Below are positions 12,716 through 54,673 of a stretch of 64,000 nucleotides of DNA, one piece after another. The notes beneath the pieces were generated by a model. That model did no database searches. It was not told where the DNA came from and worked only from the letters and a program-made list of their open reading frames with translations. The DNA lies in contig NW_003314289.1 of NCBI RefSeq assembly GCF_000143415.4, positions 153,109-217,108 on the forward strand, in the 5' to 3' direction. A program made the position numbers and the translations under genes. The stretch comes from Selaginella moellendorffii (Eukaryota > Plantae > Lycopodiophyta). How positions within the stretch are numbered: the stretch's first letter is position 1; each line of letters begins with the position of its first letter.

Positions 12716-14853
<2,138 letters not shown>

Positions 14854-27855: not shown

Positions 27856-29877
27856 ATGCGATGTTGTGGGTTTCCTTGTTTTGATAGAGCCAGGGCGGTG
27901 GTAGCGGTTTTTCTCGTTTTCTATTTGGTTTTGGGTGTGACTCTTGTTTTGGGCGATGACGATAGCGGCCGCCAGCGATCCCTGAGAATCCAGCGCGTTC
28001 TAGAAAAGATCAACAAGCCAGGCATCGCCAGCATCCAGGTCGCTAAGCATTTTCTTTTCTCCACTTCATTTGGGAAGTTCTCGACTAAAGAATCTTCTTC
28101 CTTGATGTTCTTCCTTAAATTATTCGTGGGTGAAGAGTCCTGATGGAGATATTATCGACTGCGTTCCCATCGCCAACCAGCCGGCATTCGATCATCCATT
28201 GCTGCAAGGCTCCAAGCTACAGGTTCTCATATAAATTCTCACTTCCTTAGAAATCTCCTCTAACTTTCATGCCTGCTTGTTTGATCGGTGGTAAACTTGG
28301 TTCCCACGTTTGCGTGTTTTCCTTCGAGCATTCGTATAGTTACGTGTTTCTTCTTGTTCTACCAGTTTGCTCGAGGCATTGGTGTCACTGATCGAGCGAA
28401 TTTTTTGCTATCAACTTTACAGATCTCGCCATCGAATTCCTCGTTTCTTCTGGCCTCCAAGAGTGGCAGAAAGATCCAGCAGCGATGGCACCAAGCCGGC
28501 CAGCGTTGTCCCAAAGGCAGCATTCCAGTCCGCCGGACGCTCGAGCTGGACGTGGAGAGAATCGCTCAGCAGCGCGAAAATCACTCGATCGATTCCTTTG
28601 CTCGCAAATCCCAGGGCCCTCCACACGTAGACAGCCACAAAAGCTTGCAAGCTGCGGTACCTTCTAGCTCCAGGCAACACGAGGTAAGGTTTTCTTTTTA
28701 TTCTTCTTCATTGTTCCTCCAAGTTGATGCATTTGGATTCTTCTCTTCGATCTTTGTTTTCGTGCTGCTGTTTTCCTGTTCACTTTTGTCATGTTTTATC
28801 TTCATTGCCTTACAGTTCATGTTCGCAACTTTGTCTCTGTGCAGCTTTCTTGCACCTTTTCTTTTTTTTAACTTTTTTTTTTTTTTTTGAGATTTAGCAC
28901 GCAATTGCGTATGCGGAGGGTGTGTTTTACGGAGCCGAGGCCGTGATCAACGTATGGGATCCGTCAGTAGAAGGTGCAGATGAGTTCAGCCTCTCGCAAG
29001 TCTGGATTCTCTCCGGAACTTTCAATGTTGATCTCAACAGTGTTGAAGCAGGCTGGCAGGTATTCAGACAGAAAAAAAAAATTTAAAAAAACACAAGAAA
29101 AAAGCAGAAACAACTCACAAGAATTTCCAGGTGAACCCCGCTCTCTACGGCGACAGGAATCCCCGATTCTTCACATACTGGACAGTAAGAAGTTTTCTTG
29201 TTTTGTGTTCATCTTTCTCAGGCCTTTCCAAATATCTCAGAGTGATTCTTACCGTGGCACTGGCTGCTACAACCTTCTGTGCGAAGGCTTCGTGCAAATC
29301 AACGACCAAGTCGTGCTGGGCGGAGCAGTCGCACCCGTTTCATCACTTAACGGCGTCCAATACGACATCCGCATCCTCATCTTCAAGGTACACACAAAAG
29401 CCTCCAAACTTTTCTCTTCAATCTTCTCAACATATCTCAAGCTCTAGAGAAAGAGATCTTCCATCGTCCCAAGAAACGTCTCACAAAACTCTGGAAACTT
29501 TTTATTCGTTTTCGCAGGACTTCATAACCGGCAATTGGTGGCTTCGCTATGGGGACGAGCTCATTGGCTACTGGCCTCCGCAGCTCTTCACTCACTTGGC
29601 CGGCTTTGCAAACGTGATTGAGTGGGGTGGCGAAGTGGTGAACACGAGACCAAACAACAGGCACACGGCAACACAGATGGGAAGCGGTCACTACCCGCAG
29701 TCAGGCTACGCGGTGGCCAGTTATCTCAAAAACCTTCGCGTGGTGGATCTCACCAGCTTGCTGCGCGGCCCGGCCAGCATTTTTACGCTGTCCACCAAGC
29801 CCGACTGCTACAGTATCCGATCCTCGGGTGGAACTTTCTTTTACGGGGGGCCTGGATTGAGTTCTTCCTGTCAATAA
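27856..29877 (+). CDS. Neprosin-like (DUF239) protein, copy 2
   Basis: Signal/TM segment, [72 protein letters not shown]. Confidence 0.92.
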
Positions 29878-33600: not shown

Positions 33601-36600
33601 AGATGATGTTGATGACTTCAGCAACGTTCGCAATGGTGCAATGCAATCAGAAAGATGATCCACAAAACAACCAAAATACTGCACCTTGCCCAAAAAGCGT
33701 TGCACATCAATCACACACTTTGGAGTAGGGAACTTTAGAACAGCCACAAGTTTGTCAGGATCAACTTGGAAACCCTCACGAGAAATATGGTACCCAAGAT
33801 AAGTTGTATCCTTGGACCCAAACACGCACTTCATCCGCTTCAGCTTTAAACCAACGTCGCATAGCCGATCCAACACTTTACAAACATCACGAACATGTTC
33901 CTCCCATGTCCCCTCCGAATGGATCAAGACATCATCAATGAAGTCAGCAGTCACTTCCGGCATATCGCAAAGAACCTCGTCCATCATCCGTTGGAAAGTT
34001 GCTGGAGCATTGTTCAAACCAAACGGCATCACCAAGAACTCGTACAAACCAAATGGTGTACGAAAAGCAGTCTTCGGAATATCTTCTTCGGCCATCGGTA
34101 CTTGCCAGTACCCAAAAGCAAGATCTAGCTTGGTGAACCAACGACTTCGCCCCAGACGATCCAAGAGATCAGTAGTGTGAGGAAGAGGATACACATCTGG
34201 GATCGTCACTTCGTTTAACGGACAATAGTCAATGCAGAAACGAATACTCCCATCAGGCTTCGTCACAAGATGAGGTTCCCAAGCCCAAGGACTCTCGGCA
34301 GCACCCGCAATGACTGCAACTCAAGCTCGAGATCGCCCACACGCACAACTAAGTCCACCTCATCCCGTGCACAGGCATGCGTACGGCCGTTGCCATAAAG
34401 AATGAAAACTGGTTCTGCTACACGATGCAAGTGTAGACGGTAACGTGTGGCAACAGGTCGAGCAATAGAAGATAAACTCGAACCTGTATCAACCAACACG
34501 GAGAGAATAATAGGAAACCTCTTGTTATAAAAACGAGCTTGGAAAGTAAACACTGGATGAACCGGTGCCGAGTGAACCCCTTGATGATATTCCCGAAAGA
34601 AAGATGGAGGGGTCACTGACTTATTCGCGCAAGGTCCCTCCATTACTCGCGTGACTTCTCGTTTCCCGGATGCACCTCGGTGTCCAAACCTTCCACCACA
34701 ACAGCACCAACGGGACGTTGCTGATGCCAAGGTCTCCACCCAGGAAATGGAGGTCGCCAATTCAGAAAGCACCGACAATGCCGATAAGTATGACCAACTT
34801 CACCACACGCCCAGCAACAAACATCACAGCTACGACCACGCCCTCGCCCTTGTCCTTGGACTCGAGTAGCAGCAGCATCAACCTCCATTGGAACAGGACC
34901 ATCACTCATAGGAAGTGGAGCGGAAGGACGTGCAGCGAGAAGTGGAAGAGGCAACGTCTCATAATGTTGTGCCAAGCGAAGAGCATCGTCAAGGGTGGCA
35001 GGAGCAAGTGCATGCACAAGGCCGACAAGATCTCGATGAAGTGTTGGCCACAACATTCCTAGCTTGATCCGCTCCGACATATTGGGCTCCACACGAAGCA
35101 AAAGACTTCGGAAACGAACACCAAATTGCATCACCGACTCAGATGGCCCTTAGCGAAGATGATGCAATTGTTGGAAGGCATCGTCACAATCGTCGGCATG
35201 TCCGAAGGCGTGTTTGAAGACGTCCGGAAGAACACTCCAATCCTCACGAGTGGCCGCACTCAATCCATTGTACCACTGCAATGCCATCCCTTGGAGACAC
35301 ATGGGAAACTCACGCAAACATCGAGCATCATCCCAAGAATGATATATGAATCACCATGAAGTGATAGAACCAATGGTACACATCATCCCCAGGATTCCCA
35401 CCAAAGAACTCCGGCCAAACGCGAGGATTGGCACCAAGAGCAGGAGGAGTTGGACCACGTGCTGTGAATGCCGCCATCAATTGAGTTTGGTTGTTCAATT
35501 ATAAGCGCATAACATCAAGCAATTGGACCAACTGCTACTCTATAGTCAAAGGAGGAGATTGCTGATCTACCATGAAGACGGACGAAGAAAGAGCAAAAGA
35601 AGAGAAACGACAAAAAATGAGAAGGAAATGGGAGATCTAGACAATGCAAAAAGCTAGATTTAAACCAAAATCCTGAAAGGGAAGAACAAAAGAAAGGAAA
35701 TGGAAAAAGCTAGATTTAGATGATGCAAAAACTAAATCTAAACCAAAATCCCAAATTCAAGCACTTCTCAGGGACAATCAAAAGTGCCCCTCACCTCCAC
35801 CAATGTGAGTGCTTGGAATATGAAAAAGGAATACAGAAATGTGTATATCAATTAGCCCAAAAACCTTAGTTTATATACAGAAGTGAGTGGTCCGGATTGA
35901 AACTAATCCGACGGCTACCAAAATCCCACTACGCTAATATTAGTATACGGCATCGTAACCATACACTTGGCCCTCACACCACGAAGATATAAACATAAAT
36001 ATTGCCTATATCTTAGGGGAAAGCAGAAAAGAAGTGAAACATCAAATTCTCCCTTTGAATATCACATTTATGGGGGAAGTACCAAAGCTACTGGACTTGT
36101 TGTAAACTGGAACTTCTTCCCCGTGGACAACATGAACTCAAATTCTTGAAATCCCTGACCTTTATAAGTTCTTTCCACAAGGGTGGAACATGCAATCGGT
36201 TGTGCGTGACCAAGCTCAACGAGACCAAGTAAAACTGGTTTACTCGCAGCTTGCAGGACATCGAGTACGGTCGCCTTGCCTGTTTGTCGAAATGGACAGC
36301 GTGGAGTCTGCACCCCTGCGGGTCAAGGAACTGGTACTGCTGGATCCACAACAACAAGCTCCTGCGATCGCTCCTCCTCGAGAGACCACCGCTGTCCATA
36401 CCATGCCATCTCGGCTTGCACGCAGAACGCTCGCATCTGGCTTGGGTGCTACGACCTCCGAATCTATTACGACCACAAGTTGACGTGTAAGTTTTGTGCC
36501 TCTCCAGAGTTATATATGTTCAAGTGTTTTGTTGGACTAGATGGCCGGCTTGGGACACAGGATTATAGCACGCAAGAGGAGGGGGAGGTATGTACATGTT

Positions 36601-37100
36601 TGTGTGTGCAAGCTTTTATTCTTTTCTTTCTTGCCAGGTTCTATCAAATGGTTTCTGCAAGGAGCGCACTCCGTCCTTCATGGAGAAAGCTGCGAGGGTC
36701 TGCACTATGGTAGACATGTGGTACGAGCATCCATTCTCTACCAAATCTGGGCATGGTTTTCTTTTTGTGATGCAGGGTGTTCCCCAGCCAAATGGAAAAG
36801 GCATGGCTCATGAACATGCGGCCACGATCTCGCAAAGCCACCGGACACAGCAATATGGCGTGCTTCCTGTGGTGGTTCCAAAAGAGCAGCCCAAGATTGA
36901 AGGCCGCGTTCTTTCCACTATCAACTATAAATACACCCAGTACAACAAAGTTGAAACACAGCGAAGATGGTCTTCTTCCACCCCACACCGAGGCCTTCTC
37001 AAGTAAGGAGCTCAAAAGAGAGGAGATTCCAGTACCAGCTCGTTTCTGCGACATCATTAATGTAATATCAACTAGTTCAATGGAGTGATTTCTCTCTCTG
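30640..37100 (+). pseudogene. Family X copy 1, split by the gypsy element
   Basis: KPGVGF..AMSKFVA..ETLFLVLALCYI at 30680-31180. Homology to copy 2 breaks at ~31275 and resumes at ~36030. Deletions and frameshifts. Confidence 0.85.
31430..35978 (-). mobile_element. Full-length but mutated Ty3/gypsy LTR retrotransposon (gag-PR-RT-RH-INT)
   Basis: 175-bp LTRs at 31430-31604 and 35804-35978 (TGTGAG..CTCACA). PBS TGGTGGAGGTGAGGGG and PPT AGAGGAGGGGATGA on the minus strand. CCHC knuckle, LVDTGS protease, RT (FGLNNAPATFQR, FIDD), integrase H-H-C-C, DNG, YHPQSDG, GPY. Stops and frameshifts. Confidence 0.97.
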
Positions 37101-37596
37101 AGGCGATGCTTAGATGGCGTCGTTGCCTGCGTAGTGCACACACGGTTAGCGATCCTTTCCTTGTTACCTGTTTGAGCTAAGATGGAGCCATTCAACTTAA
37201 ATGCGAAAGAGAAGAAATACTATATGTGGACACGACCAAGTTCGAGGCTCTGGTATGTGAGAAAGTCTTTCTCCTGGCTTTGATTTCCCTTTTCCCTCCT
37301 TTCTTCCAGGACGCATGGCTTGACAGTGCGGAGGTAGACACTTTGAATGCCTCACGAGAAAAGTTAAAGAAGTTTCCGAGCACAACATTTCCCCTCGAGA
37401 TATCAGGCTCACAAAGAAGCGGATTGCTGATGCGCTGGAGCCTGGAGAAATGGTGCTTGTTTTTTATTGTTCGGCATTGTCATGCTTGGTAGTAGCATTC
37501 TATTGTCTTGGGTATGCCACTTACGCGAGCAGTATTCCTTTTGTCTTTCACTGAATGCATGCATATGCTTGTGCCTAGCATAAACATCTCTGTGGA

Positions 37597-38570
37597 TCTT
37601 GACGAGATGAACCACATTTCTACTGAGTAATAGGAACATTCAGGTAAGCATTGATTTTCAAAAGTGTAGTTTTGCTCCTTGTCCTCCGGGAAACTGGGCT
37701 CTGGTTGTCGCAGTTACGTAGCTCCAGAGTATGCAATGACCGGACATCTTTTGGTGAAGAGCGATGTCTACCGCTACGGGGTCGTGCTACTGGGGCTACT
37801 GTCGGGCAGAAGTCGGTCGACATGTCCCAGCCACCCGGTCAAATAAATCTAGTCACATGGGCAAAGACCGCTGCTCAACAGCAAGGAGGGACTGGAGATC
37901 CTCGGCTCTAAACAATGTTCCATTCGACAACCTCGTCAGGGTGGCAGCGATCACCTCCAGCCGGACGTCTCTCACAGGCCTCTCATGCAGTCGTCCAGGC
38001 GTTGAAGCTAATGTACAACGACTCGGACGCCAGCGATGGTATCGTGTCCGGCAATGGCAGCATGCCCAGGGAAAGCCAGCAGCAGGACGTAAAGTCGGGT
38101 GGAACGTACGCAAGCGGTGGTGGTGGTGGCGGTGGTGACAACGAGAGAATCCGCACTGTGGCGAGACACGGCTGGGAGAGTGGCTCGTTCAACAGCATTG
38201 ACTACGACTCTAGGACGTTTGGTGGAGATCGGGCGGGGAAGCCGAAGCGTCCTTGGTACCGAGTGAGAAACGCGTAATGAGATAGTGAGTGAGTCGGCGC
38301 TACTGCGGTACGGACGATGCTAACAGGAACGACCATAGTGACAGCTTTTAGAGGGAGAGGGGCGGCGGGGGTGGTGGTGGCGGAGATGGAAGGGATGGAT
38401 TGATAGTTGTTTCACGCAGGCTAGTCGTATTCTTGCTCGAGATGATGGTTTCGAGCTCGGCTTCTCATCGATTTGGATCTTCTTGATGGGTGTTTGCTAC
38501 TGGAGCAAAAGAAGGCGAGCTTGAGTTCCTGGCTCGGGAAACAAGCAAGATGGTGGTAGTTTGTAACATA
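37597..38570 (+). pseudogene. ALE2-like kinase 3' fragment (end of the penultimate exon, last intron, last exon, 3' UTR)
   Basis: Reverse complement of ~54370-55580 with frameshifts ([34 protein letters not shown]). The intron is retained. Confidence 0.92.
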
Positions 38571-38636
38571 TGCCAGAGTATCGAATAAACGGCTTAATAG
38601 TAAACGTATTGCACAGTATTGGGGCGCCGCGCAGCA

Positions 38637-40527
38637 ATGCTTTCCAGGTTTTCCAGTTCTTTTCGTAGAAGTCTCTCGACGCTAGGCAGTTTTTCTCCGC
38701 TGCCCTCGCGGGGTCGTTGGTCTCCGCTTCCGGGCAGTTTATCTGCGGATCTGAGGCGTACGCTTCATCTATCGCCCGTGTATCGTACCGAGATTTTGAA
38801 ACCAGGGGTAGGGTTTAATGATCTTGTCAACGCAAGGGGTATTGGTTATGCTGGGGCCATGTCCAAGTTCGTCGCCAAAGCTGCACGGGCGCATGAGGAG
38901 GAGGCAGCGGCGATGGACGTGCACGAATGCGTGTGCATAGATGCCATGATCGCCAAATGGCATGCTGAAGATCCGGACGAGACGCTGTTCCTGGTGCTGG
39001 CACTCTGCTACATCGCCCGCCTCTCCGATGCCGAGAGGAGCGCGTGCGCTGCAACGCTGGGCTGGGACGGCGCGCGAGCGCAGATGGACTGCATGGTTGA
39101 TTTCGCTCGCCGGGTGCTGCTCTCGCGGACTCCAACCCTTGACTCGTTAGAAGCATCGAGGCAAGACGAGGAGGTGACGGAGCACCTGGAGCGTTTGTGG
39201 AGCGCGTTTTGCAGGGAGAGGAACATGAAAGGTTTGTAACTTTTCTTGGTTTTCTAATGGCGGTTTTGGATCTTTGTTTTGGAAGTGTGCTCCAAGGAGG
39301 TGGCGCGCACCGATATCGATATGGATTTCTTTCCTGCAGAGCCTTACCGCAAGCCTTGCAATGGGGAATTTAGATGTAAGAAGTTTTTTATTTACCTGGT
39401 TTCTCTTGTCGACAACTCTTTCAGGGCGCTGCAAAGGGGACGTGGAGGAGAAGTGGGACATCAAATTCTCCCCTCTGAGTACCACGTTTGCGGGGGAAGT
39501 GCCAAAGCTACTGGACTTGGTATCCAAAGTTGTGAACAGCGACTTCTTCTTTTTTCACCCGGTGGACAACATGGTGAGTAACTCAAATTCTTGAAATCTC
39601 TGATCTTTATAAGTTCTGTCCACAGGGGTGGAATATGCGATCGGTTGTGCGTGACCAAGCTCGACGAGACCAAGTAAAATTGGTTTACTCGCTGCTTGCA
39701 GGACATCGAGTCCCGCCGCCTTGGCCGTTTGTCGAAATGGACGGCGTCATGTCTGCACCCCTGCGGGTCAAGGAACTGGTACTGCTGCTCGAAGGGATCC
39801 ACAACAACAAGCTCCTGCGATCGCTCGCCCTCGAGAGGCCACCGCTGTCCGTGTTGCCGCACTACCATGCCATCTCGGTTTGCACGCAGCACGCTCGCAT
39901 CTGGCTTGGGCGCTACGACCTCCGAATCTATTACGACCACAAGTTGACGTGTAAGTTTTGTGCCTCTCCAGAGTTATATATGTTCAAGTGTTTTGTTGGA
40001 CTAGATGGCCGGCTTGGGACGCAGGATTCTAGCACGCAAGAGGAGGAGGAGGTATGTACATGTTTGTGTGTGCAAGCTTTTATTCTTTTCTTTCTTGCCA
40101 GGTTCTAGCAAATGGTTTCTACAAGGAGCGCACTCCGTCCTTTATGGAGAAAGCTGTGAGGATATGCACTATGGGAGAGATGTGGTACTAGCACTAGCAT
40201 CCATTCTCTAACACACATTAAAATATCGGCATGATTTGTTTATACAGGGTGTCCTCCAGCGAAAAGGAAGAGGCATGGCTGATGAACATGTGGCCAGAGG
40301 ACTACGATCTCGCAAAGCCACCGGACACAGCGATGTGGCGTGCTTATAGACAATACGTTGGGCATCCCGTGGTGGTTCCAAAAGAGCAGTCCAAGATTGG
40401 AGCAGCCCGAGTCCTTTCGGATATCGACTATGAATACACCCGGTACCTTGGCTGGGAGACAAAGTCGAAACACAGCGAAGATGGTCTTTTTCCACTACCC
40501 GTACCAACTCTCCATGAAATCTTATAA
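38637..40527 (+). CDS. Family X copy 2: intact orphan gene, 7 exons, 522 aa, putative mitochondrial presequence
   Basis: Exons 38637-39231, 39286-39375, 39425-39573, 39626-39950, 40005-40051, 40102-40184 and 40248-40527 splice GT-AG into 1569 nt with no internal stop. N-terminus MLSRFSSSFRRSLSTL. Confidence 0.8.
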
Positions 40528-40839
40528 ATTAAAAAGCTGTATGAAGAGTAAAGAATATATCTAGAATATCCCGGCATATTCTAAAGTATTTTTTAAGCCA
40601 ACGGTCGAGATTTCTCCTGTTATACTAATTTCCCTCCGCACCTGCTATTCGCGGCGATCTGGATCCTCGTGAGATTTTGTTCCTTCCAAAGTTCCTTACA
40701 CATGACAGTTCATGAGCTCAAATCAGTGGAAACCACGAGTCAGGAGGCATTGTTTCATCAACCATGTTCAAATGCCTGTGCAAAACAGAAATCTAGTCTA
40801 TAGTTCTAAAGTGGAGAGCATATAAATCTGTTATTTATA

Positions 40840-43800
40840 GGAGCCATTTGCACCTGCACTTTATATAAAAATATTTTAAAACGTATTTTAATTTTTGTGA
40901 CTGTACTTTAGTAGTTTTTAGGTTGTTTTAAGCTTTAAGTATGCATTTTAAAACATTTTCATTCCCACTTGCATAGGTTTTTATGGTAAAAATTTAATGT
41001 AAAACACTAATGACTTTGCACCTGACTTACTTTAAAATGTCTTCAAAATAGCATTCGAACATGTTTTAAAATATTTTAAAATTTCAAATTCAAATCAAAT
41101 TTGAAATGCTAACCCTAAATTTCAATTTTCAAATATTAAACTTGAACATAGCAACCATGCAGTTCTACGACGCCGCAAACATAGGAAGTTAATTAGGTTC
41201 TCTCGGACCTCCTATGCATCCTCCATCCTATGCAAGTCTTCTTGTGGTTCTCCCTTAGCTACAACAGGATCCTTGTAATTTTCGAAAATCTTTACTTCCT
41301 TCAAGGCTTGAATGTGTTTCTCCCATGCTTTGATCTCAGCATTGATGTTTATCTCACTAACATCAATTAAGAAGTTTGTAAGCAACCAAAGGGAACGACT
41401 TGAGAGATGGTTTATGGGGTTTAAATATATAGGGATGAATAAAAGTGCACCCTCTTTTCCAATTGATTAAGGGTTTTAAAATACTTGGAGTTAAGCGTCC
41501 TTGAGTTTGAATAGTATTGAGCTGGATAACCTCCCAGAAAGTCCAAATTCAGGAACTTACAAAGTTGTGCAAAATGCAACAACTTTTGATGATGTTCGGT
41601 AGGTACTTCTACTTGATCCTTTGTTTTTGATCCAAGCATTTGAATTTCATTTTTAGGAGTCTAAATGCTTTTTCAATAACAATCCGGGCCAGATGGTGTT
41701 GCTGGTACTCCGCCTCAGTCACCGTCAACTGGGAACATGTTTCAAATTAATAATTGAAAAAAAAAAAACAATCAACTTACCCAAGTGAGGGATCATCAAG
41801 TGTTGCTGCAGTTGGTAGTCCTTGTCTCCCACCAGATATGGCTCAATCCACTCGTCAAAAGCAAACTCTCGAAGAACTGTGAGTAATTCCTTCGCTTGGA
41901 TCTTGTGGTATAGCCTAGAGTTCCGAAAAACCCTCATGTCATGAACACTTCTTGGGAAAAAAAAAAACCAATTAGATATATAGAAGAAAAAAATTAAAAG
42001 TAATTACCTGGCCAGCTTGCATAGATATTCAAGAACCTTTTCTGAGCGTCACAAACCCTCTACAAGATCACCTAATACTGTTGTTTTCGATCAAAGTAGC
42101 CCTCACCATCAGGGCCAACTGATCAGATAATCTCAAAATGTGTATAGTTGATTGCCCCAGCCATATTAGGGAGATGGGTCTTGGTGATTTGCTAAAAATT
42201 TGCCACCACAGCTCTAACTTCCGCTGTTGTCTCTGGGAATCGAATCTTGTACCCAAGGCACTTGACAATTGCAGTAGCATGTGCAGTGGCTTCCCCGATC
42301 CCAAATTTGTCAGACAGGTCAGAGTAGTCGGTGTTCTTGAACAACTTGTACAAGGTGACCCCTAAAAGAACATCCACTGGCACCGCTCTCATAAACTTTG
42401 TATCCTGCTTGCAGATTTCAACCTCCAGAATGCCACAAAGCCCAAAGAACATCATCTTCTCCATCCTCAACTTCCGCTTCCATCGACCAGGGTTATACAA
42501 CTCCATGAAGCATACACCGCGGCTTCACCCACCAGAGACTAGTGTCAAGTCACTTGGACAAGACTGCTCGACAAAGCTTGTCTTCGTCCTCCTCCTCATC
42601 CGGAAGAGTTTATGCCACCAGGGTTTTGTCATCGATAATGGATTGAAAAGCCTCCACAGCGAGAAACAAAACTTGTAGAATAAGCAAGATTACCTTGTTC
42701 CTCAATAAAGCATCGATGACTGTTGCTTGATTGTTGAAAGAACCATGTTCCCCCCAAGCATCTCCTTGGTTTTCCCCGAAAGCATCTTTTATTTCCTCGG
42801 GTTGAACTATTGCAAGATCCTGAAAAAAAAATTTGTTAGAAAAAATCTAGAATATCATAGCCTAAACATAGTTTAGTTTAATATTAATAATTAATGTCCC
42901 CCTAAAATCCCAAAAACAAGACAGCTAACTCCTAGATGCAGCCCCATTCAAGAAGTTAGAGATGGAGCTTGCAAGGTTGGAGATGGCTCTAGCTAAAACT
43001 GTTGCAGCTGCAGCCTTCTCCTTCTCAGCCAGGCTATTCTCCTTCATGCAAACAATGCTCTCCTTTTGCCATGCTAGATTCTGCTCATTTCGAGCAGTAG
43101 CGAGAGCATTTCCCTCAGCGAGCAAAGTTGTCATGCTTTTCTCGGCCTTCTTCGGGTTCTTCTGCTTCCCTGAACTCCCTGGCACCTGTGTAGCATCTCT
43201 AGGAGGATCAACACCATCCGCGGGGTCCTCCTCGTGAGCTTCCTCTTCCGAAGCATCTGAATCAACAAGAAATGTTGGAGATGTCGATGTTTGCTTTGCT
43301 AGGAATTCATCCATGATGTTGAAGTACTCGACTAGGAACACCTTCAAGTTCAACTTCATTGGCATAAGCTGCTTTGCATCCTTGTGGCTCAAGCTAAAGT
43401 AGTCAGGGTTCCCAGTTTTCCTTTGGAAATCACAAACACACTTGTAGTTGTTGCAAAGGTTGTTCCAGCGAGTCTAGCAAGCCTTCCAACCCCGCTGCAT
43501 GCCAGCAGCCTGGACCTTCTTCACAATCCTCTTCCAGCAATCAGTTGCTGTCAACGTTGTCTCCTCACTTCCCCACACTGCCCTGATCTTTCCAAGGTGA
43601 TCTTCCCATTTGAAGTCAATGAGGGAAGCCATCTCACCATCTCCCTAGTTTTTCCCGCATTTCTTCCTCACTTTCTTCACAACATGAACACCTGCCTCCC
43701 CTTCCTCGTCGGCATCACCCTCCTCTTCATCACCCCAATCATCTTCTTCCACCTCCTGTTCAATGGCAACGTCGTCTTGCTCCTCCAAGTTATGAAACTA

Positions 43801-44604
43801 GAGTTGCATGTACTACTGTCCTGATGACTGCTCTTGCTCCAGGTCACCTGCTTCACCACCTTAAACCCGAAACCACTCTCCTAGAATCTGAGCTAAACTC
43901 GGTTTGAAGCTTACCTTGTTAGTTGTCATAGAAGAGAATTCAGAGAACAATCAAGTTCTAGAAGCCGTGGGGGGAGAGGCTCCAGCTCCCCGTGCTACAA
44001 CTCCCCATTCTCCAGCTCTGAGTCCACCCTGATTGAGGCCAAGATTCGAGAGATCGGCATCTCCACGGCCTCGGCCCCAAGGCGGCATGCCTCCTTGAGC
44101 AACAGCTGGGCCTGGTGCTCGTCCTCCAACCCCGGATGCTCCTCACTCCACAAACAGCACCTCCTCGCTGGATGCCACTGCCCTGAACCTGTACCATCTC
44201 CTCGTCAAACCCTATAACTCCTCCTTCCGCAAAATCGGCTACTCCTCCTTCCTCAACCGAATCCCCAACATGATCTAACCCTAGGGCGATGACTGCTACC
44301 ATAAAATGCCTGAGCTCACGGCAGCTCGCAGCAAAAAACTGAAACACGTGCTGGAATCTTTGGGGAATCTTGGAGATCCCTTTTAAAAATATTTTAAGTT
44401 CCCCCCTATCTTTTAAAATCGGTCTGAATGTTTTAAAAAGTGAAAACATTGTGTTAAAGTTAGCACTATGTGCAAATGAAATTTTTTTTAAAAATATCCT
44501 AAATTTTAATGTAAAGTAATTTACTTTATTTTAAAACATAGTGCGAATGTATTCATCACTTAAATTTAACACATTTCAAGAATAAAGAGCAGGTACATGG
44601 CTCC
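40840..44604 (-). mobile_element. PIF/Harbinger DNA transposon (degenerate Myb/SANT-like ORF + DDE nuclease)
   Basis: Imperfect TIRs GGAGCCAT(T)TG(C/T)ACCTGC. Trihelix-type RGWKAC*TRWNNL..YK at ~43450-43500. Nuclease motifs LRMEKMMF, LGVTLYKL, DKFGIGEAT, YLVGDKDY, RIVIEKAF, CCILHNF at ~41.3-42.5 kb. Confidence 0.9.
41377..41561 (+). mobile_element. 185-bp solo LTR with 5S rRNA-like core (Cassandra-like TRIM)
   Basis: TGTAAG...CTTACA ends and a 5-bp TSD AAGTT on both sides. 41487-41544 aligns without gaps to the A-box to C-box part of plant 5S rRNA. Confidence 0.8.
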
Positions 44605-45804
44605 TATGGTCTCTTATTCTTCTGTATTGCCAACAACTGGTTGGTCATGGGATCCAGTTCTATGCCAGGTACCTGCATGTCCATAGAATTTGTAGCGTGC
44701 GAGAGCTAGATAGGTTGCTTGTTTCTGGTATATAGTTTTCCAGCGTTACAACAACTCAGCAGCGCGGCATGCTCAACTTGATGACTTGCTCATCCTTACT
44801 GTGCCAGACCAGGAAAACACCTCGAGGTGCAAACCGAGCTCTCACTGCAAATGGCTCTGTCATCAATGATATCATATGGATACGGTACGGTCCTCTTTTG
44901 TATTAATTTTTCTGACATGCTCGTCATTAAGTGTGAGGAACTAGACGCCTGCTCCCTGGTCAACAGTGGTGGTGCCTTCGTTCCCAGGTGAAAGCTCTTC
45001 GTTCCCAGGTGAAAGCTCTTAGTTCTCTGACTCATTTCATTTTTTTTATTATAGGGTCAGTTCACCAAGTTATGTCTTCGTCCAAAATCATCATTGAAGC
45101 TTTATTTTTTGATAGATTCTTTTCCTGTTCTTCTCAAAGGTCAGAAAAAAACTAGAAGTTTCACCAACTGTTACTTCTATGCATCATTGGTTTTTGACAT
45201 ATTGATAGCAATAACCAAAACAATAGAGCTCAAGGTATTATCAATGTTCATTTTTCTATTCTATTGTCTTTTTTTCTAACTATATGAGGATGATTTTGCA
45301 ACTTCTTTATTGTTTTAAAGTCTTTATCTTTCCCGTGATCCAACTATACTTGTAACTACATTAACCAGTTTGCTATTGAACGCTTATATGAATCATATCC
45401 TCAATTTTGTAAGGAAAGCCTACGATAGGCCATTATGTGGACACGACCAAGTTCGAGGCTCTGGTATGTGAGAAAGTCTTTCACCTGGCTTTGATTTCCC
45501 TTTTCCCTCCTTTCTTCTAGGACGCATGGCTTGACAGTGCGGAGGTAGACACTTTGAACGCCTCACGAGAAAAGATAAAGAAGTTTCCGAGAATGACATT
45601 TCCCCTCGAGATATCAGGCTCACAAAGAAGCAGATTGCTGATGCGCTGGAGCCTGGAGAAATGGTGCTTGTTTTTTATTGTTCAGCATTGTCATGCTTGG
45701 TAGTAGCATTCTATTGTCTTGGGTATGCCACTTACGCGAGCAGTATTCCTTTTGTCTTTCACTGAATGCATGCATATGCTTGTGCCTAGCATAAACATCT
45801 CTGT

Positions 45805-46905
45805 GGATCTTGACGAGATGAACCACATTTCTACTGAGTAATAGGCACATTCAGGTAAGCAGTGATTTTCAAAAGCATAGTTTTGCTCCTTGTCCTCTGA
45901 GAAACTGGGCTCTGGTTGCCGCAGTTACGTAGCTCCAGAGTACGCAATGACCGGACATCTTTTGGTGAAGAGCGATGTCTACCGCTACGGGGTCGTGCTA
46001 CTGGGGCTACTGTCGGGCAGAAGCCGGTCGATATGTCCCAGCCACCCGGTCAAATAAATCTAGTGACATGGGCAAAGACCGCTGCTCAACAGCAAGGAGG
46101 GACTGGAGATCCTCGGCTCTAAACAATGTTCCATTCGACAACCTCGTCAGGGTGGCAGCGATCACCTCCAGCCGGACGTCTCTCACAGGCCTCTCATGCA
46201 GTCGTCCAGGCGTTGAAGCTAATGTACAACGACTCGGACGCCAGCGATGGTATCGTGTCCGGCAATGGCAGCATGCCCTGGGAAAGCCAGCAGCAGGATG
46301 TAAAGTCGAGGAATCCTTTTGTCGGCGGTGGTGGAACGTACGCAAGCGGTGGTGGTGGTGGTGGCGGTGGCGACGAGAGAATCCGCACTGTGGCGAGACA
46401 CGGCTGGGAGAGTGGCTCGTTCAACAGCATTGACTACGACTCGAGGACGTTTGGTGAAGATCGGGCAGGGAAGCAGAAGGCACTGTCAAGCTGGGGGAGC
46501 AGCAGCAATGCGCATCAGCTCCCACTGCGGCGACATCGATCAAGCGGAAGCGTCCTTGGTACCGAGTGAGAAACGCGTAATGGGACAGTGAGTGAGTCGG
46601 TGCTACTGCGGTACGGACGATGCTAACAGGAACGACCATCGTGACAGTTTTTAGAGGGAGCGGGGCGGCGGGGGTGGTGGTGGCGGAGATGGAAGGGATG
46701 GATTGACTATTGTTTCACGCAGGCTAGTCGTATTCTTGCTCGAGATGATGGTTTCGAGCTCGGCTTCTCATCGATTTGGATCTTCTTGCTGGGTGTTTGC
46801 TACTGGAGTATAGCGAGATCACAGGAGCACAAGAAGGGAGCTTGAGTTCCTGGCTCGGGAAACAAGCTGTCCAGAGTGCAAGATGGTGGTAGTTTGTAAC
46901 ATATG
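45805..46905 (+). pseudogene. ALE2-like kinase 3' fragment (second + strand copy)
   Basis: 45420-46905 is a direct repeat of ~37200-38570 and retains more of the parental tail (RNPFVGGGG, ..SSNAH). Confidence 0.92.
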
Positions 46906-47672
46906 ATATCGTTGATGACAGAGCCATTTGTGGCGAGAGCTCGGTCTGCACCTCGAGGTGTTTTCTGGTCTGGCACAGTAAGGACGAGCAAGTCGTCAAG
47001 TTGAGCATGCCACGCTGCCGAGTTGTTGTAACGCTGGAAAACTAAATACCAGAAGCAAGCAACCTAGCTAGCTCTCGCACGCTACAAATTCTATGGACAT
47101 GCAAGTACCTGGCATAAAACTGGATCCCATGACCAACCAGTTGTATAAGAGACCATAGTCAATTTAACACCTTGCAAGGAAGAAAAAATAACAAATTTAT
47201 ATGTTAACTTTCTCTCCACTTTAGAATTACACACCAGATTTCTGTTTTGCACGGGCAGTTGAATGATTGATATAACAACGCCTCCTGACTTGTGGTTCCC
47301 ACTGATTTGAGCACACGAACTGTCATGTGTAAGGAACTTTGGAAGGAACAAAATTTCACGAGGATCCAGATCGCCACACGTGCCCTGGAAAGCGAATCGA
47401 TAAGGAGATAGCAGGCGCCAAGGCGCCGCCTGGTCATGTCGCCCTGTGCCCTGGAAACCTCCCCTAACTCGCTTGCTCGCATGCCAAGCTTGTATCGAAT
47501 GAATTCCAGGATATGGATGCTGCCAGTGCGCAGATCAAAAAAATTGTATTACAAATAGTATCCGGTATTAATTAGTTTAACAGGAGAAATCTCGACCGTT
47601 GGCTTAAAAAATACTTTAGAATATGCCGGGATATTCTAGATATATTCTTTACTCTTCATACAGCTTTTTAAT

Positions 47673-49554
47673 TTATAAGATTTCATGGAGAGTTGGTACG
47701 GGTAGTGGAAAAAGACCATCTTCGCTGTGTTTCGACTTTGTCTCCCAGCCAAGGTACCGGGTGTATTCATAGTCGATATCCGAAAGGACTCGGGCTGCTC
47801 CAATCTTGGACTGCTCTTTTGGAACCACCACGGGATGCCCAACGTATTGTCTATAAGCACGCCACATCGCTGTGTCCGGTGGCTTTGCGAGATCGTAGTC
47901 CTCTGGCCACATGTTCATCAGCCATGCCTCTTCCTTTTCGCTGGAGGACACCCTGTATAAACAAATCATGCCGATATTTTAATGTGTGTTAGAGAATGGA
48001 TGCTAGTGCTAGTACCACATCTCTCCCATAGTGCATATCCTCACAGCTTTCTCCATAAAGGACGGAGTGCGCTCCTTGTAGAAACCATTTGCTAGAACCT
48101 GGCAAGAAAGAAAAGAATAAAAGCTTGCACACACAAACATGTACATACCTCCTCCTCCTCTTGCGTGCTAGAATCCTGCGTCCCAAGCCGGCCATCTAGT
48201 CCAACAAAACACTTGAACATATATAACTCTGGAGAGGCACAAAACTTACACGTCAACTTGTGGTCGTAATAGATTCGGAGGTCGTAGCGCCCAAGCCAGA
48301 TGCGAGCGTGCTGCGTGCAAACCGAGATGGCATGGTAGTGCGGCAACACGGACAGCGGTGGCCTCTCGAGGGCGAGCGATCGCAGGAGCTTGTTGTTGTG
48401 GATCCCTTCGAGCAGCAGTACCAGTTCCTTGACCCGCAGGGGTGCAGACATGACGCCGTCCATTTCGACAAACGGCCAAGGCGGCGGGACTCGATGTCCT
48501 GCAAGCAGCGAGTAAACCAATTTTACTTGGTCTCGTCGAGCTTGGTCACGCACAACCGATCGCATATTCCACCCCTGTGGACAGAACTTATAAAGATCAG
48601 AGATTTCAAGAATTTGAGTTACTCACCATGTTGTCCACCGGGTGAAAAAAGAAGAAGTCGCTGTTCACAACTTTGGATACCAAGTCCAGTAGCTTTGGCA
48701 CTTCCCCCGCAAACGTGGTACTCAGAGGGGAGAATTTGATGTCCCACTTCTCCTCCACGTCCCCTTTGCAGCGCCCTGAAAGAGTTGTCGACAAGAGAAA
48801 CCAGGTAAATAAAAAACTTCTTACATCTAAATTCCCCATTGCAAGGCTTGCGGTAAGGCTCTGCAGGAAAGAAATCCATATCGATATCGGTGCGCGCCAC
48901 CTCCTTGGAGCACACTTCCAAAACAAAGATCCAAAACCGCCATTAGAAAACCAAGAAAAGTTACAAACCTTTCATGTTCCTCTCCCTGCAAAACGCGCTC
49001 CACAAACGCTCCAGGTGCTCCGTCACCTCCTCGTCTTGCCTCGATGCTTCTAACGAGTCAAGGGTTGGAGTCCGCGAGAGCAGCACCCGGCGAGCGAAAT
49101 CAACCATGCAGTCCATCTGCGCTCGCGCGCCGTCCCAGCCCAGCGTTGCAGCGCACGCGCTCCTCTCGGCATCGGAGAGGCGGGCGATGTAGCAGAGTGC
49201 CAGCACCAGGAACAGCGTCTCGTCCGGATCTTCAGCATGCCATTTGGCGATCATGGCATCTATGCACACGCATTCGTGCACGTCCATCGCCGCTGCCTCC
49301 TCCTCATGCGCCCGTGCAGCTTTGGCGACGAACTTGGACATGGCCCCAGCATAACCAATACCCCTTGCGTTGACAAGATCATTAAACCCTACCCCTGGTT
49401 TCAAAATCTCGGTACGATACACGGGCGATAGATGAAGCGTACGCCTCAGATCCGCAGATAAACTGCCCGGAAGCGGAGACAAACGACCCCGCGAGGGCAG
49501 CGGAGAAAAACTGCCTAGCGTCGAGAGACTTCTACGAAAAGAACTGGAAAGCAT
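47673..49554 (-). CDS. Family X copy 3: intact, near-identical inverted copy of copy 2 (~519 aa)
   Basis: ORF translations mirror those of copy 2 (coordinates sum to 88200). The only differences seen are a 9-nt deletion and W>L in the presequence. Confidence 0.8.
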
Positions 49555-49599: not shown

Positions 49600-50500
49600 A
49601 TAATCTGGCATAGACAGCTTGTTTCCCGAGCCGATCTCGCTATACTCCAGTAGCAAACACCCAGCAAGAAAATCCAAATCGATGAGAAGCCGAGCTCGAA
49701 ACCATCATCTCGAGCAAGAATACGACTAGCCTGTGTGAAACAATGATCAATCCATCCCTTCTATCTCCGCCAACCACCACCGCCGCCCCGCTCCCTCTAA
49801 AAACTATAGCAGCCAAATGTCACTATGGTCGTTCCTGTTAGCATCGTCCCGCTTGTACCGCAGTAGCACCAACACTCACTGCGTGTTTCTCACCCGGTAG
49901 CACTGTCAAGCTGGGGGAGCAGCAGCAATGCGCGTCATCTCCCAGTGCGGCGACATCGGTCAAGCCGAAGCGTCCTTGGTAATTTCCACCAAACGTCCTA
50001 GAGTCGTAGTCAATGCTATTGAACGAGTCACTCTCCCAGCCGTGTCTCGCTGCGTCTCGTCGTCACCACCGCCGACAAAAGGATTCCTCGACTTTACGTC
50101 CTGCTGCTGGCTTTCCCTGGGCATGCTGCCATTGCGGACACGATACCGTCGCTGGCGTCCGAGTCGTTGTATATTAGCTTCAACGCCTGGACGACTGCAT
50201 GAGAGGCCTGTGAGAGACGTCCGGCTGGAGGTGATCGCTGCCACCCTGACGAGGTTGTCAAATGGAACATTGTATAGAGCCGAGGATCTCCAGTCCATCC
50301 TTGCTGTTGAGCAGCGGTCTTTGCCCATGTCACTAGATTTATTTGACCGGGTGGCTGGGACATGTCGACCGGCTTTCTACTGCGACAACCAGAGGTCAGT
50401 TTCTCGGAGGACAAGGAGCAAAACTACGCTTTTGAAAATCACTGCTTACCTGAATGTTCCTATTACTCTGTAGAAATGTGGCTCATCTCGTCAAGATCCG
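49600..50500 (-). pseudogene. ALE2-like kinase 3' fragment (minus-strand copy, with internal micro-inversion)
   Basis: [19 protein letters not shown] and [18 protein letters not shown] on the minus strand. 49901-49981 is flipped. Confidence 0.88.
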
Positions 50501-50949
50501 CAGAGATGTATCATATGCATGCATTCAGTGAAAGACAAAAGGAATACTGCTCGCGTGAGTGGCATACCCAAGACAATAGAATGCTACTACCAAGCATGAC
50601 AATGCCGAACAATAAAAAACAAGCACCATTTCTCCAGGCTCCAGCGCGTCAGCAATCTGCTTCTTTATGAGCCCGATATCTCGAGGGGAAATGTCGTGCT
50701 CGGAAACTTCTTTAACTTTTCTCGTGAGGCGTTCAAAGTGTCTACCTTTGCACTGCGTCCTGGAAGAAAGGAGGGAAAAAGGAAATCAAAGCCAGGAGAA
50801 AGACTTTCTCACATACCAGAGCCTCGAACTTGGTCGTGTCCACATAATGGCCCATCGTAGTATCTCTTCTCGCTCGCATTTAAGTTGAATGGCTCCATCT
50901 TAGCTCAAACAGGTTACAAGGAAAGGATCGCATCGAAGCTCTGCCGTTC

Positions 50950-51740
50950 TAAGCATGCGTGCACTACGCAGGCAACCATCTAAGCATCGCCTCAGAGAGA
51001 GAAATCACTCCATTGAACTAGCTGATATTACATTAATGACGTGGCGGAAACGAGCTTTGAAGTGCTGGTATTGGAATCTCCTCTCTTTTGAGCTGCTTCC
51101 TTGAGAAGGCCTCGGTGTGAAGGTAGCGGGTGCATTTATAGTTGATAGTGGAAAGGACGCGGCCTTCAATCTTGGGCTGCTCTTTCGGAACCGCCACGGG
51201 ATGCCCAACGTACTGTCTGTAAGCGCGCCACATCGCTATGTCCGGTGGCTTTGCGAGATCATAGTCCTCTGGCCGCATGTTCATCAGCCATGCCTTTTCC
51301 ATTTGGCTGGAGAACACCCTGCATCACAAAAAGAAATCATGCAAAGATTTTAATGTGTGTTAGAGAATGGATGCTAGTACCACATGTCTACCATAGTGCA
51401 GGCCCTCACAGCTTTCTCCACGAAGGACGGAGTGCGCTACATGCAGAAACCATTTGCTAGAACCTGGCAAGAAAGAAAGGAATAAAAGTTTGCACACACA
51501 AACATGTACATACCTCCTCCTCCTCTTGCGTGCTAGAATCGTGTCTCCCAAGACGGCCATCTAGTCCAACAAAACTCTTGAACATATATAACTCTGGAGA
51601 GGCACAAAACTTACACGTCAACTTGTGGTCGTAATAAGCCAGATGCGAGCGTGCTGCGTGCAAGTCGAGATGGCATGGTAGTGCGGCAACACGGACAGCG
51701 ATGGCCTCTCGAGGGTGAGCGATCGCAGGAGTTTGTTGTT
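50950..51740 (-). pseudogene. Family X copy 4, 5'-truncated
   Basis: AWLMNMRPEDYDLAKPPDIAMWRAYRQYVGHPV and YYDHKLT. Homology ends at ~51740. Confidence 0.85.
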
Positions 51741-52459: not shown

Positions 52460-54220
52460 AGAGCATGAATACACCCGGTTCTTGGCCAAGGAGACAGAGT
52501 CGAAGCACAGCAGGGATCATCTCTTTCCACTGGCAATCGAGAAATTCTCAAGGGAGGACCTCATAAAGAGAGGACATAGTTGATAGTGCAAAGGACGAGG
52601 CCTCGAATCCTTCGCTGCTCTCTAAGAACCACCACGGGATGCCCAAGGTACTGTTTATAAGCACGCCACATCGCCGTATCCGGTCCATGCCTCTTTCTTT
52701 TCGTTGGGGTACACCATGACAACAACCAATGCCAGGATTTAAATCTGTGTGTTGAAGAATGGAAGCTATTACCACATTGCTTCAACAGTGCAGTCCCTCA
52801 CAGCTTTCTCCATGAAGGACGGAGTGCGCTCCTTGCAGAAACCATTTGCTAGAACCTGACAAGAAGAAAAGAATCAAAGTTTGTACACACAAACAAGTAT
52901 ATACGTCCTCCTCCTCCTGCGTGCTAGAATCCTGTGTCCCAAGCCGGTCATCTGGTCCAAGAAAACTCTTTAGAAAGAGAACACATATAACTCTGGAGAG
53001 GCACCACTTACACGTCAAGTCGTGGTCATAATAGATTCGGAGGTCGTAGCGTCCACGCCAGATGCGAGCGTGCTGCGTGCAAGCCGAGATGACATGGTAG
53101 TGCGGCAATACAGCCAGCGGCGGCCTCTCGAGAGCAAGCGATCGCAGGAGCTTGTTGTTGTGGATCCCTTCAAGCAGCAACATTAATTCCTTGATACGCA
53201 AAGGGGCAGAGTCGGCGGCGTCCACTGGAACACACGAGTCAGGCAAGATGAATGGATGTCCCGCAAGCTGCGAGTAAGCCAGTTTTGCTTGGTCTTCTCG
53301 AGCGTGGTCCCATCAATGGTTACGTTGGTGAGATCGACCAATCAACGAGATTTTAATGTTATCAGCTACAAGCTCTATCATTCTATCATTCGCGCTGGGA
53401 ACTCAAGGTTAGTTACTCACCAGATTGTCCACTGGGAGAGAACCGAAGCATATCACAACTTTGGACACCAAGTCCAGTAGCTTTGGCACTTCCCCCATAA
53501 ACGTGGTACTCAAAGGGGAGATTTTGATGCTCCACTGCTCCCTCTCTTCCTCTATGCAACGCCCTGCAGCTGTTGTCAACAAGAGAATAAAAAAGACTTT
53601 TCACATCTATATTCCCCATTGGAAAAGGTTCGCCAGCAAGAGATCCGTCCCAATAACGTTGCGCGCCACCTCTTTGGAACTCACTGTACGTAATGAAACG
53701 AGAAAACTTTAGCCTCAATACAAACCTTTGGTGTTCCTGTCCTCGCAAAACTCGCTCCACAAGGGCTCCAGGTGCTCCGTCACCTCCTCGTCTTGCTTCC
53801 ATGAGGCAAGGCTTGTAAGTCCAGTCCGCGAGAGCAGCACCCGGCGAGCGAAATCAACCATGCAGTCCATCTGCGCTCGCGCGTCATCCCAGCCCAGCGT
53901 TGCAGCACAAGCACTCCTCTCCGCATCTGACAGGCGGGCAATGTAGCAGAGTGCCAGCACCAGGAACAGCGTCTCGTCCGGATCAGAGGGACGCCATCTC
54001 GCAAGCATGGCATCTAAGCATGCGCTTTCGTGCTCGTCCAGCACCGCTGCCTCCTTCTCATGCGGCCGAGCTGCTCTAGAGACACTGCCTGAGCATAATC
54101 AATATCTTGCCTTGTAATGGTCATGACAAATTCTAACCCTTCAAGATCTCGGTGGACACACATGGCCCGAGCGGAGAAAAAGTAGCTGAGAGATTCCTAC
54201 GAAAAGCAGAAAACTTGGAA
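52460..54220 (-). pseudogene. Family X copy 5, diverged and probably disrupted
   Basis: DPDETLFLVLALCYIARLSDAERSACAATLGWD, LLLEGIHNNKLLRSLALERPP, DTAMWRAYKQYLGHPV. Deletions, and the tail is inverted. Confidence 0.8.
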
Positions 54221-54673
54221 ACACTGCCAAACTTTTTAGGTTCTTACCGAAGAGAATTTTTTTTAGGGTTAAAAAGGGTATTAAATTAATGGCGGAAGTC
54301 TAACAAATGGAATTATTTAATCAAGTGATTAAATTCAAGGAGCCTAATACTCTAGTCAAATGAAATATGTTACAAAAAAACGAGAGACAACTCACTACCA
54401 TCATCTTGCCTGGCGTCCGCACAATCAAATCACTCTCGAGAGCTTGTTTCCCGAGCCAGGAACTCAAGCTCGCCATCTTCCCTTCTTTTGCTCCCTGTGA
54501 TCTCGCTATCCTTCAGCAGTAAACACTTTCAGCAAGAACATCCAAGTCGATGAGAAGCCGAGCTCGAAACCACCATCTCGAGCAAGAATCCGACTAGCCT
54601 GTGTAAATCAATGATCAATCTTCCATCCCTTCCATCTCCGCCACCACCACCACCACCACCGCTCCCTCTAAAA

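What the first reader, a model, noticed from the sequence alone, without database searches (positions are those of the whole stretch)
38637..49554. Orphan mitochondria-targeted-like gene family held as a near-perfect palindromic pair
Seen: two intact copies of a 7-exon, ~520-aa gene that I cannot assign to any family face each other as a ~2 kb inverted repeat (about 38650-40620 vs 47580-49550). Identity includes the introns, apart from the presequence region. Flanking parts of the same duplication (ALE2 fragments, 40.65-40.83 kb vs 47.2-47.4 kb) and three other X copies are clearly more diverged. The N-terminus (MLSRFSSSFRRSLST, rich in R/S/L) looks like a mitochondrial presequence. Inference: arm-to-arm gene conversion or very recent re-duplication keeps the functional pair homogeneous while other copies decay. 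This birth-and-death pattern is what a cytonuclear-interaction or conflict gene might show. Function is unknown.
Basis: partly seen in the sequence, partly recalled or inferred. Interest (0 to 1): 0.78.

Follow-up and report, generated by a model that had tools for sequence, protein, structure and literature searches.

The report
Spikemoss-only gene as converted inverted pair
Two facing, almost identical copies of a seven-exon gene known only from the spikemoss Selaginella moellendorffii sit inside an older, more diverged inverted duplication; a recent copy-and-paste repair event (gene conversion) most likely made them identical, and what the protein does is still unknown.

Summary
Window 38650-40622 and 49550-47578 are inverted copies with 1 mismatch in 1,973 bp and no gaps. 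They sit inside an older ~4.4-kb inverted duplication (36350-40836 vs 51740-47186). Its outer parts differ by 7.7% substitutions plus 24 indels.

Each arm carries an intact 7-exon gene (522 and 519 aa, all introns GT-AG, 49-63 nt). The right-arm product is exactly RefSeq XP_024536178.1 (LOC112348244, "uncharacterized protein", Selaginella moellendorffii). So the gene is already annotated, though uncharacterised.

Every relative found in the 1.84- and 5.8-billion-protein searches is from S. moellendorffii. There was no Pfam, NCBIfam or PDB-sequence match, and AlphaFold models were unusable (pLDDT 36 and 48).

Best reading: one recent gene-conversion tract of about 2 kb between the arms, ending where indels break homology. 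Selection for a homogeneous pair, mitochondrial import and cytonuclear conflict are untested.

A second scaffold also holds two copies, and another locus holds a second identical-protein pair.

The scan already noted this gene on another piece of this genome (s1-420297), with the same conclusion.

This is an ordinary kind of event affecting a true orphan family. Interest is modest.

The parts
38637..40527 (+). Left-arm gene X, 7 exons (38637-39231, 39286-39375, 39425-39573, 39626-39950, 40005-40051, 40102-40184, 40248-40527), 522 aa
   Evidence: Exon sum is 1569 nt with a single terminal stop, all introns GT-AG, GC by codon position 0.59/0.44/0.64. Exon translations are substrings of P0010 except for codons 3-5 and 28.
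47673..49554 (-). Right-arm gene X = RefSeq LOC112348244 (XP_024536178.1), 519 aa; exons 49554-48969, 48914-48825, 48775-48627, 48574-48250, 48195-48149, 48098-48016, 47952-47673
   Evidence: Every exon translation is a substring of P0010.
38650..40622 (.). Homogenised tract, left copy (partner 49550-47578): 1 mismatch in 1,973 bp, no gaps
47578..49550 (.). Homogenised tract, right copy
36350..38568 (+). Outer part of the left arm: 3' part of older copy X' (c2, 36030-36981) plus kinase 3' fragment K1 (37149-38546). Differs from 51740-49613 by 7.7% substitutions and 24 gap events.
49613..51740 (-). Outer part of the right arm: kinase fragment K3 (49614-50931) plus X' 3' fragment c5 (51120-51740)
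40653..40836 (+). 3' tail of the left arm (partner 47375-47186, 86% identical); not kinase-derived as far as could be tested
47186..47375 (-). 3' tail of the right arm
40837..47185 (.). Spacer of about 6.3 kb between the arms. It holds decayed transposon ORFs (41.7-44.5 kb, no Pfam hit) and a third kinase fragment K2 (45420-46905, + strand, 3.5% from K1). K2 is bracketed by a small inverted repeat, 44633-44878 / 47144-46900.
30667..36981 (+). Older copy X' split in two (c1 30667-31274 = exons 1-3; c2 36030-36981 = exons 3-7) by a Ty3/gypsy-type retrotransposon with LTR remnants 31425-31607 / 35799-35981 (92% identical)
   Evidence: c1 ends at 39436 and c2 starts at 39449 in X coordinates. RT/integrase-like ORFs were seen by eye.
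52575..54153 (-). Copy c6, 74% identical to X, lacking the start region and carrying frameshifting indels (pseudogene). It lies directly downstream of the intact kinase gene.
54431..55577 (-). 3' end of the intact receptor-like kinase gene that is the source of fragments K1-K3 (last exon ORF 54674-55435)
   Evidence: Pfam PK_Tyr_Ser-Thr, E = 2.7e-5. K copies align here at 81-87% identity (13-19% substitution divergence).

Best explanation
A tandem unit (kinase gene followed by gene X) was first multiplied. A block X'-kinase fragment-X-tail was then duplicated in inverted orientation, long enough ago for the arms to diverge by about 8% and many indels. Much later, a break in one X copy was repaired using the X copy on the other arm as template. 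This is non-allelic gene conversion between inverted repeats. It overwrote about 2 kb, exons and introns alike. The tract stopped at both ends where indels interrupt homology (38622-38649 and 40629 onward). Since then one substitution (L28W, left arm) has accumulated; the 9-bp difference either arose afterwards or marks the tract edge. X itself is a real protein-coding gene of a family so far seen only in Selaginella moellendorffii. The protein is mostly helical by prediction. Its N-terminus is basic, Ser-rich and free of acidic residues, so it is probably imported into an organelle. Shown here: the anatomy, the step in identity, the coding signature and the species-restricted family. Inferred: conversion as the event, organelle import, and any function.
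For: Inner tract has 1 mismatch in 1,973 bp and 0 gaps, against outer arms with 151 mismatches in 1,969 aligned bp and 24 gap events, and a tail at 86%. Homologous but diverged sequence lies on both sides of the tract, so the copies share position as well as sequence. The tract edges coincide with indels. Both arms share derived residues A82, V360 and W442, where the two copies on the sister scaffold and the paralogues have P, T and R. The two sister-scaffold copies share derived L437. That fits concerted evolution at both places. Gene reality: GT-AG introns of 49-63 nt, an exon/intron GC contrast, GC3 above GC2, an exact RefSeq model, and paralogues at 49-78% identity with long conserved blocks. 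Family range: exon-1 phmmer against 1.84e9 representatives gave 7 relatives, all S. moellendorffii. Profile and C-terminal word searches of 5.8e9 proteins also returned only S. moellendorffii. N-termini of four paralogue lineages have 6-13 R+K and the first acidic residue at position 23-53.
Against: No reads or long-read assembly could be checked, so a consensus artefact is not excluded. The concerted-evolution test therefore rests on gene-model proteins, and on the assumption that the sister scaffold is the allelic or orthologous region. The near coincidence of the tract with the gene (start codon to about 100 bp past the stop) could also point to selection, or to copying of a gene-sized unit. 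Comparison of X with the decayed copies shows no clear third-position excess, so purifying selection on X is not shown from this window. There is no expression or localisation evidence.
Confidence: 0.72

Rival explanations
1. Ongoing, selected homogenisation. The pair is kept identical by repeated conversion because two equal doses, or a conflict-type arms race, are favoured.
For: The tract matches the gene almost exactly. Only the two converted copies are intact, while four other copies or fragments are broken. A second locus has two genes (LOC9631083 and LOC9633316) encoding identical proteins. The sister scaffold's two copies are also alike, with 10 differences in 425 aa.
Against: One event explains the data. 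Both arms carry W at a position that is R in every other family member, which looks like a spreading mildly deleterious or neutral change rather than refinement. There is no dN/dS, expression or dosage evidence. The orientation of the second pair is unknown.
Confidence: 0.15
2. Assembly artefact. The two arms truly differ by about 1-2%, or one arm does not exist, and the Sanger assembly of a two-haplotype genome merged reads into one consensus used twice.
For: The public assembly holds both haplotypes (background knowledge of the 2011 genome paper, not checked here). The two copies on the sister scaffold differ at 2.4% of residues, while here the difference is almost zero.
Against: The window contains no N runs. 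Both flanks are homologous, diverged and assembled in inverted order. The edges carry arm-specific indels and a SNP. A separate scaffold also carries two copies.
Confidence: 0.08
3. Recent re-duplication or transposon-mediated capture. A 2-kb gene-sized unit was newly copied into the other arm rather than converted.
For: The region is full of rearrangements and transposon remnants. The unit is gene-sized.
Against: The identical tract is flanked on both sides by older homologous sequence in the same order, so a new insertion would have had to replace the resident copy precisely, which is conversion in effect. No terminal repeats were seen at the tract ends (read).
Confidence: 0.05

Closest known systems
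Arm-to-arm gene conversion in palindromes (primate Y and X ampliconic palindromes; also reported on willow sex chromosomes) - from background knowledge
   Same: Inverted arms around a short spacer. Arm identity (99.95%) is far above what the age of the duplication predicts. Intact genes sit in the arms. Derived changes are shared by both arms.
   Different: The scale is tiny (2-kb tract, 4.4-kb arms, roughly 6-7-kb spacer). Only part of the arm is homogenised and the rest is 7.7% diverged. There is no link to a sex chromosome or to germline expression. One event suffices.
Interlocus gene conversion between neighbouring duplicated genes in plant genomes (described for rice and Arabidopsis paralogues) - from background knowledge
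   Same: A short conversion tract between nearby paralogues inside an older segmental duplication, with tract ends at breaks in homology.
   Different: The converted gene here belongs to a species-restricted family of unknown function, and the copies are convergent.
S. moellendorffii paralogues: LOC9631083/LOC9633316 (P0019, P0020), SELMODRAFT_416386 (P0004), SELMODRAFT_424789 (P0005), LOC9646138 (P0013)
   Same: Same family at 49-78% identity, the same conserved blocks and the same kind of N-terminus. One of these loci is also a pair that encodes identical proteins.
   Different: They lie on other scaffolds, their arrangement is unknown, and none is characterised.

Membership tests
Palindrome with arm-to-arm gene conversion | Two inverted arms separated by a short unique spacer | tested here: met
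   Arms 36350-40836 and 51740-47186 with a spacer of about 6.3 kb.
Palindrome with arm-to-arm gene conversion | Arm identity much higher than the age of the duplication predicts | tested here: met
   0.05% divergence in the inner tract against 7.7% in the outer arms, within the same duplication. This holds for the inner 2 kb only.
Palindrome with arm-to-arm gene conversion | Copies group by locus rather than by arm when compared with an orthologous palindrome | tested here: inconclusive
   At protein level, 8 sites separate the window pair from both sister-scaffold copies, and at least 4 can be polarised. The sister DNA, its orientation and its allelic status could not be checked.
Taxonomically restricted (orphan) gene family | No relatives outside the lineage in sensitive searches | tested here: met
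   phmmer of exon 1 against 1.84e9 representatives, a profile search and a C-terminal search returned only S. moellendorffii proteins. Unannotated genomes of other Selaginella species were not searchable.
Taxonomically restricted (orphan) gene family | Evidence that it is a real coding gene | tested here: met
   Splice sites, GC contrast and GC3 above GC2; conservation among paralogues at about 50% identity; an exact RefSeq model. Transcription was not testable.
Any Pfam / NCBIfam / PDB family, including transposon proteins | Significant profile or sequence match | tested here: not met
   No Pfam hit for X or its clean paralogues even at E <= 10. NCBIfam gave none. The best PDB sequence match had E = 0.59.
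Leucine-rich repeat (RNI-like, LRR_6) proteins | Recognisable LRR repeats | tested here: not met
   The only basis is an ESM-Atlas lead at 0.84-0.85 with about 120 shared features, within the range reported for chance. No LRR model matched at E <= 10.
Mitochondrial presequence-bearing proteins | N-terminus rich in Arg, Ser and Leu, with no acidic residues | tested here: met
   First 50 residues hold 7 R+K and 15 S+T, with the first acidic residue at 35. Three other paralogue lineages are similar. The same composition fits plastid transit peptides.
Mitochondrial presequence-bearing proteins | Amphipathic helix, cleavage motif, demonstrated import | not testable with these tools
   The hydrophobic moment of 0.28-0.53 is only indicative. 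There are five or six prolines in the first 50 residues. No TargetP run or experiment was possible.

The most novel reading that the evidence does not exclude
The family arose within the Selaginella lineage and encodes organelle-imported proteins. It persists as homogenised twin genes at more than one locus (this pair and LOC9631083/LOC9633316) because conversion between twins is favoured, for example for dosage or in a cytonuclear interaction tied to Selaginella's unusual organelle genetics.
Probability: 0.08. Interest if true: 0.6.

Novelty: new member of a known kind. Interest (0 to 1): 0.3.

Why it matters
It is a clean small-scale example of gene conversion inside an older inverted duplication in a lycophyte. 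The unconverted flanks act as a built-in clock. It also marks a genuine species-restricted, probably organelle-targeted family for which the public JGI model is partly misframed. It does not open a new kind of mechanism. Its value lies in annotation and in providing a test case for concerted evolution, and possibly in pointing to a recurring twin-gene habit in this family.

Tried and rejected
1. Pfam, NCBIfam and PDB-sequence searches of the exons, the RefSeq protein and the paralogues found nothing.
2. The word search with exon 1 alone was blank because of the tool's length limit. The exhaustive search then found the family.
3. AlphaFold2 on the 519-aa protein with the 11-row family alignment gave mean pLDDT 36. 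On exon 4 alone it gave 48. The models are unusable, so no fold search was run.
4. The ESM Atlas gave recognition 1655 with no usable hit for exon 1, and only weak LRR leads for residues 72-519. I rejected these as a family assignment.
5. A codon-position and synonymous/non-synonymous count between X and the decayed copies was uninformative, since the decayed copies evolve neutrally.
6. The 3' tail was tested as a kinase fragment and showed no similarity.
The sister scaffold and the second twin locus could therefore not be fetched, and the organism was identified from cluster names instead.
8. Literature searches for the locus tags, and for Selaginella nuclear palindromes or gene conversion, found nothing relevant.
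9. The left-arm exons were never joined into a typed or saved sequence. Searches were done exon by exon by reference, and the right-arm product was available by reference as P0010. The joined left-arm step was left out.
Full report
**Observation**

The repeat finder reports a 1,981-nt inverted repeat, 38650-40630 against 47570-49550. A base-by-base alignment shows exactly one mismatch between 38650 and 40622 (38719 G on the left arm). At the 5' edge there are a 9-bp in-frame indel (38641-38649) and a 6-bp indel (38622-38627). Beyond 40629 the alignment breaks up. The window contains no N runs.

**Extent and age of the duplication**

It runs from about 36350 to 40836 on the left and from 51740 to 47186 on the right.

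The outer part (36350-38568 vs 51740-49613) has 151 mismatches in 1,969 aligned bases (7.7%) and 24 gap events. The 3' tail (40653-40836 vs 47375-47186) is 86% identical. The inner tract has 1 mismatch in 1,973 bases and no gap. At the flank rate, so few differences have a probability of about 1e-64. The step in identity is therefore real and sharp, and its two ends lie at indels.

**Anatomy of the region**

On the minus strand at the right end of the region there is an intact receptor-like kinase gene. Its last exon is 54674-55435 (Pfam PK_Tyr_Ser-Thr). It is followed by c6, a decayed copy of X (54153-52575, 74% identical).

Next on that strand come an X' fragment (c5, 51740-51120), a kinase 3' fragment (K3, 50931-49614), the intact right-arm X (49554-47673) and the tail.

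On the plus strand the mirror order is X' (c1 30667-31274 plus c2 36030-36981), K1 (37149-38546), the intact left-arm X (38637-40527) and the tail. c1 ends at X coordinate 39436 and c2 starts at 39449. So c1 and c2 are one old copy split by a retrotransposon, whose LTR remnants (31425-31607 / 35799-35981) are 92% identical.

A third kinase fragment, K2 (45420-46905), lies in the spacer. It is bracketed by a small inverted repeat. The spacer also holds decayed transposon ORFs that have no Pfam hit.

The history that fits is this: tandem growth of a kinase-X unit, then inverted duplication of an X'-K-X-tail block, then late homogenisation of X only.

I found no similarity between that tail and the kinase gene. 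The kinase fragments are on the 5' side of each X copy.

**The gene**

Relatives found later fixed the splice model. The exons are 38637-39231, 39286-39375, 39425-39573, 39626-39950, 40005-40051, 40102-40184 and 40248-40527. They sum to 1,569 nt, giving 522 aa.

All six introns are GT-AG and 49-63 nt long. Intron GC is 0.35-0.37 against exon GC of 0.47-0.62. GC by codon position is 0.59/0.44/0.64.

The right arm gives 519 aa. Every one of its exon translations is a substring of P0010, which is RefSeq XP_024536178.1, 'uncharacterized protein LOC112348244 [Selaginella moellendorffii]', on a 1,968,525-bp scaffold.

The left-arm product differs only by three extra residues after Met-Leu-Ser and by L28W. 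L is the state in the sister copy and in paralogues, so W is a new change.

The older JGI model SELMODRAFT_415614 (P0001, 431 aa) starts at Met75. It skips the true exon-4 acceptor and reads that exon in the wrong frame.

I did not build or submit a joined left-arm protein. Searches were done exon by exon by reference, and P0010 served as the referenced spliced product.

**Family and range**

Exons and full proteins have no Pfam, NCBIfam or PDB-sequence match.

phmmer with exon 1 against 1.84 billion representatives found seven relatives, all from S. moellendorffii. An eighth weak match (E = 3.4e-4, a repetitive protein) was not followed up. A profile search and a search restricted to residues 270-519 over 5.8 billion proteins again returned only S. 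moellendorffii proteins.

The family sits on at least four scaffold groups. Members share long conserved blocks at 49-78% identity, which argues for real, constrained proteins.

AlphaFold2 gave pLDDT 36 for the whole protein and 48 for exon 4. Both predictions are mostly helical and unusable, so I ran no fold search. ESM-Atlas leads to LRR proteins score 0.84-0.85. That is within the chance range, and no LRR profile backs them.

The N-termini of four paralogue lineages are basic, Ser/Thr-rich and free of acidic residues for the first 22-52 positions. This fits an organelle import signal but does not separate mitochondrion from plastid. The many prolines weaken a simple amphipathic-helix reading.

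**Concerted evolution**

The same 90% cluster as P0010 contains two proteins from a different scaffold of 1,751,465 bp: SELMODRAFT_418592 and 418593 (P0016, P0017).

Over 425 comparable residues these two differ from each other at 10 sites. They share 8 differences from the window pair.

Outgroup paralogues polarise several of those sites. A82, V360 and W442 are derived and present in both window arms. L437 is derived and present in both sister copies.

The arms' flanks are 7.7% diverged, which is more than the distance between the scaffolds' X copies. Shared derived states within each scaffold therefore point to transfer between arms.

This rests on proteins only, and on the sister scaffold being the corresponding region. 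That agrees with my inference but is unchecked.

W442 replaces an Arg that is invariant in all other members. It reads as a neutral or mildly harmful change that conversion carried to both arms.

**A second twin**

Two RefSeq loci on a 3,149,477-bp scaffold, LOC9631083 and LOC9633316, encode identical proteins. The two neighbouring JGI models (P0011, P0018) are identical over about 510 residues. The orientation and nucleotide identity of that pair are unknown.

**Mechanism and rivals**

The best-supported account is a single recent non-allelic gene-conversion tract of about 2 kb between the inverted copies, ended by indel heterology on both sides (confidence about 0.72).

- Selected, repeated homogenisation (about 0.15) is compatible with the data but not needed.
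- An assembly artefact (about 0.08) is made unlikely by the diverged flanks assembled in inverted order, the arm-specific edge differences and the second scaffold. Only long reads can exclude it.
- Fresh re-duplication of a gene-sized unit (about 0.05) would have had to replace the resident copy precisely.

The protein's function is unknown. My working guess is an organelle-imported helical protein. The basis for that guess is weak.

**Verdict**

The gene is already annotated as uncharacterised, and the scan has reported its sister locus. This is a new instance of a known kind of event acting on a genuine orphan family, and its interest is modest.

Noticed in passing
window 38859-40527 (+), JGI model SELMODRAFT_415614 (P0001): The public JGI protein starts at Met75 and reads exon 4 (39626-39950) from a wrong acceptor and in the wrong frame. 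This produces about 85 residues of low-complexity nonsense. The RefSeq model of the other arm is correct.
   Followed up: yes
window 30667-36981 (+): c1 and c2 are the two halves of one old X copy, split by a Ty3/gypsy-type retrotransposon. RT/integrase-like ORFs lie at 31784-35134 on the minus strand, and LTR remnants at 31425-31607 / 35799-35981 are 92% identical.
   Followed up: partly
other scaffold (3,149,477 bp): LOC9631083 / LOC9633316; proteins P0019, P0020, P0011, P0018: A second pair of neighbouring family members encodes identical proteins. Near-identical twins may be a habit of this family. Their orientation and DNA identity were not obtainable.
   Followed up: partly
window 40273-40275 and its mirror on the right arm (codon 442): Both arms carry Trp where every other family member, including the decayed copies c2 and c5, has Arg (CGG to TGG at a CpG). 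This looks like a derived change spread to both arms.
   Followed up: yes
window 44633-44878 and 46900-47144: A 246-bp inverted repeat (94% identical) brackets the third kinase fragment K2 (45420-46905) inside the spacer. It suggests a further small inversion or duplication event.
   Followed up: no
window 60107-62803 (-), 29131-29877 (+), 12716-14823 (-), 17372-18538 (-): Neighbouring genes: an 898-aa single-exon PPR protein, a neprosin-domain gene, a beta-amylase-like gene (identified by eye) and a CEP76-peptidase-like domain gene.
   Followed up: partly
The spacer ORFs I scanned had no Pfam hit, and I did not test the 5S claim.
   Followed up: no
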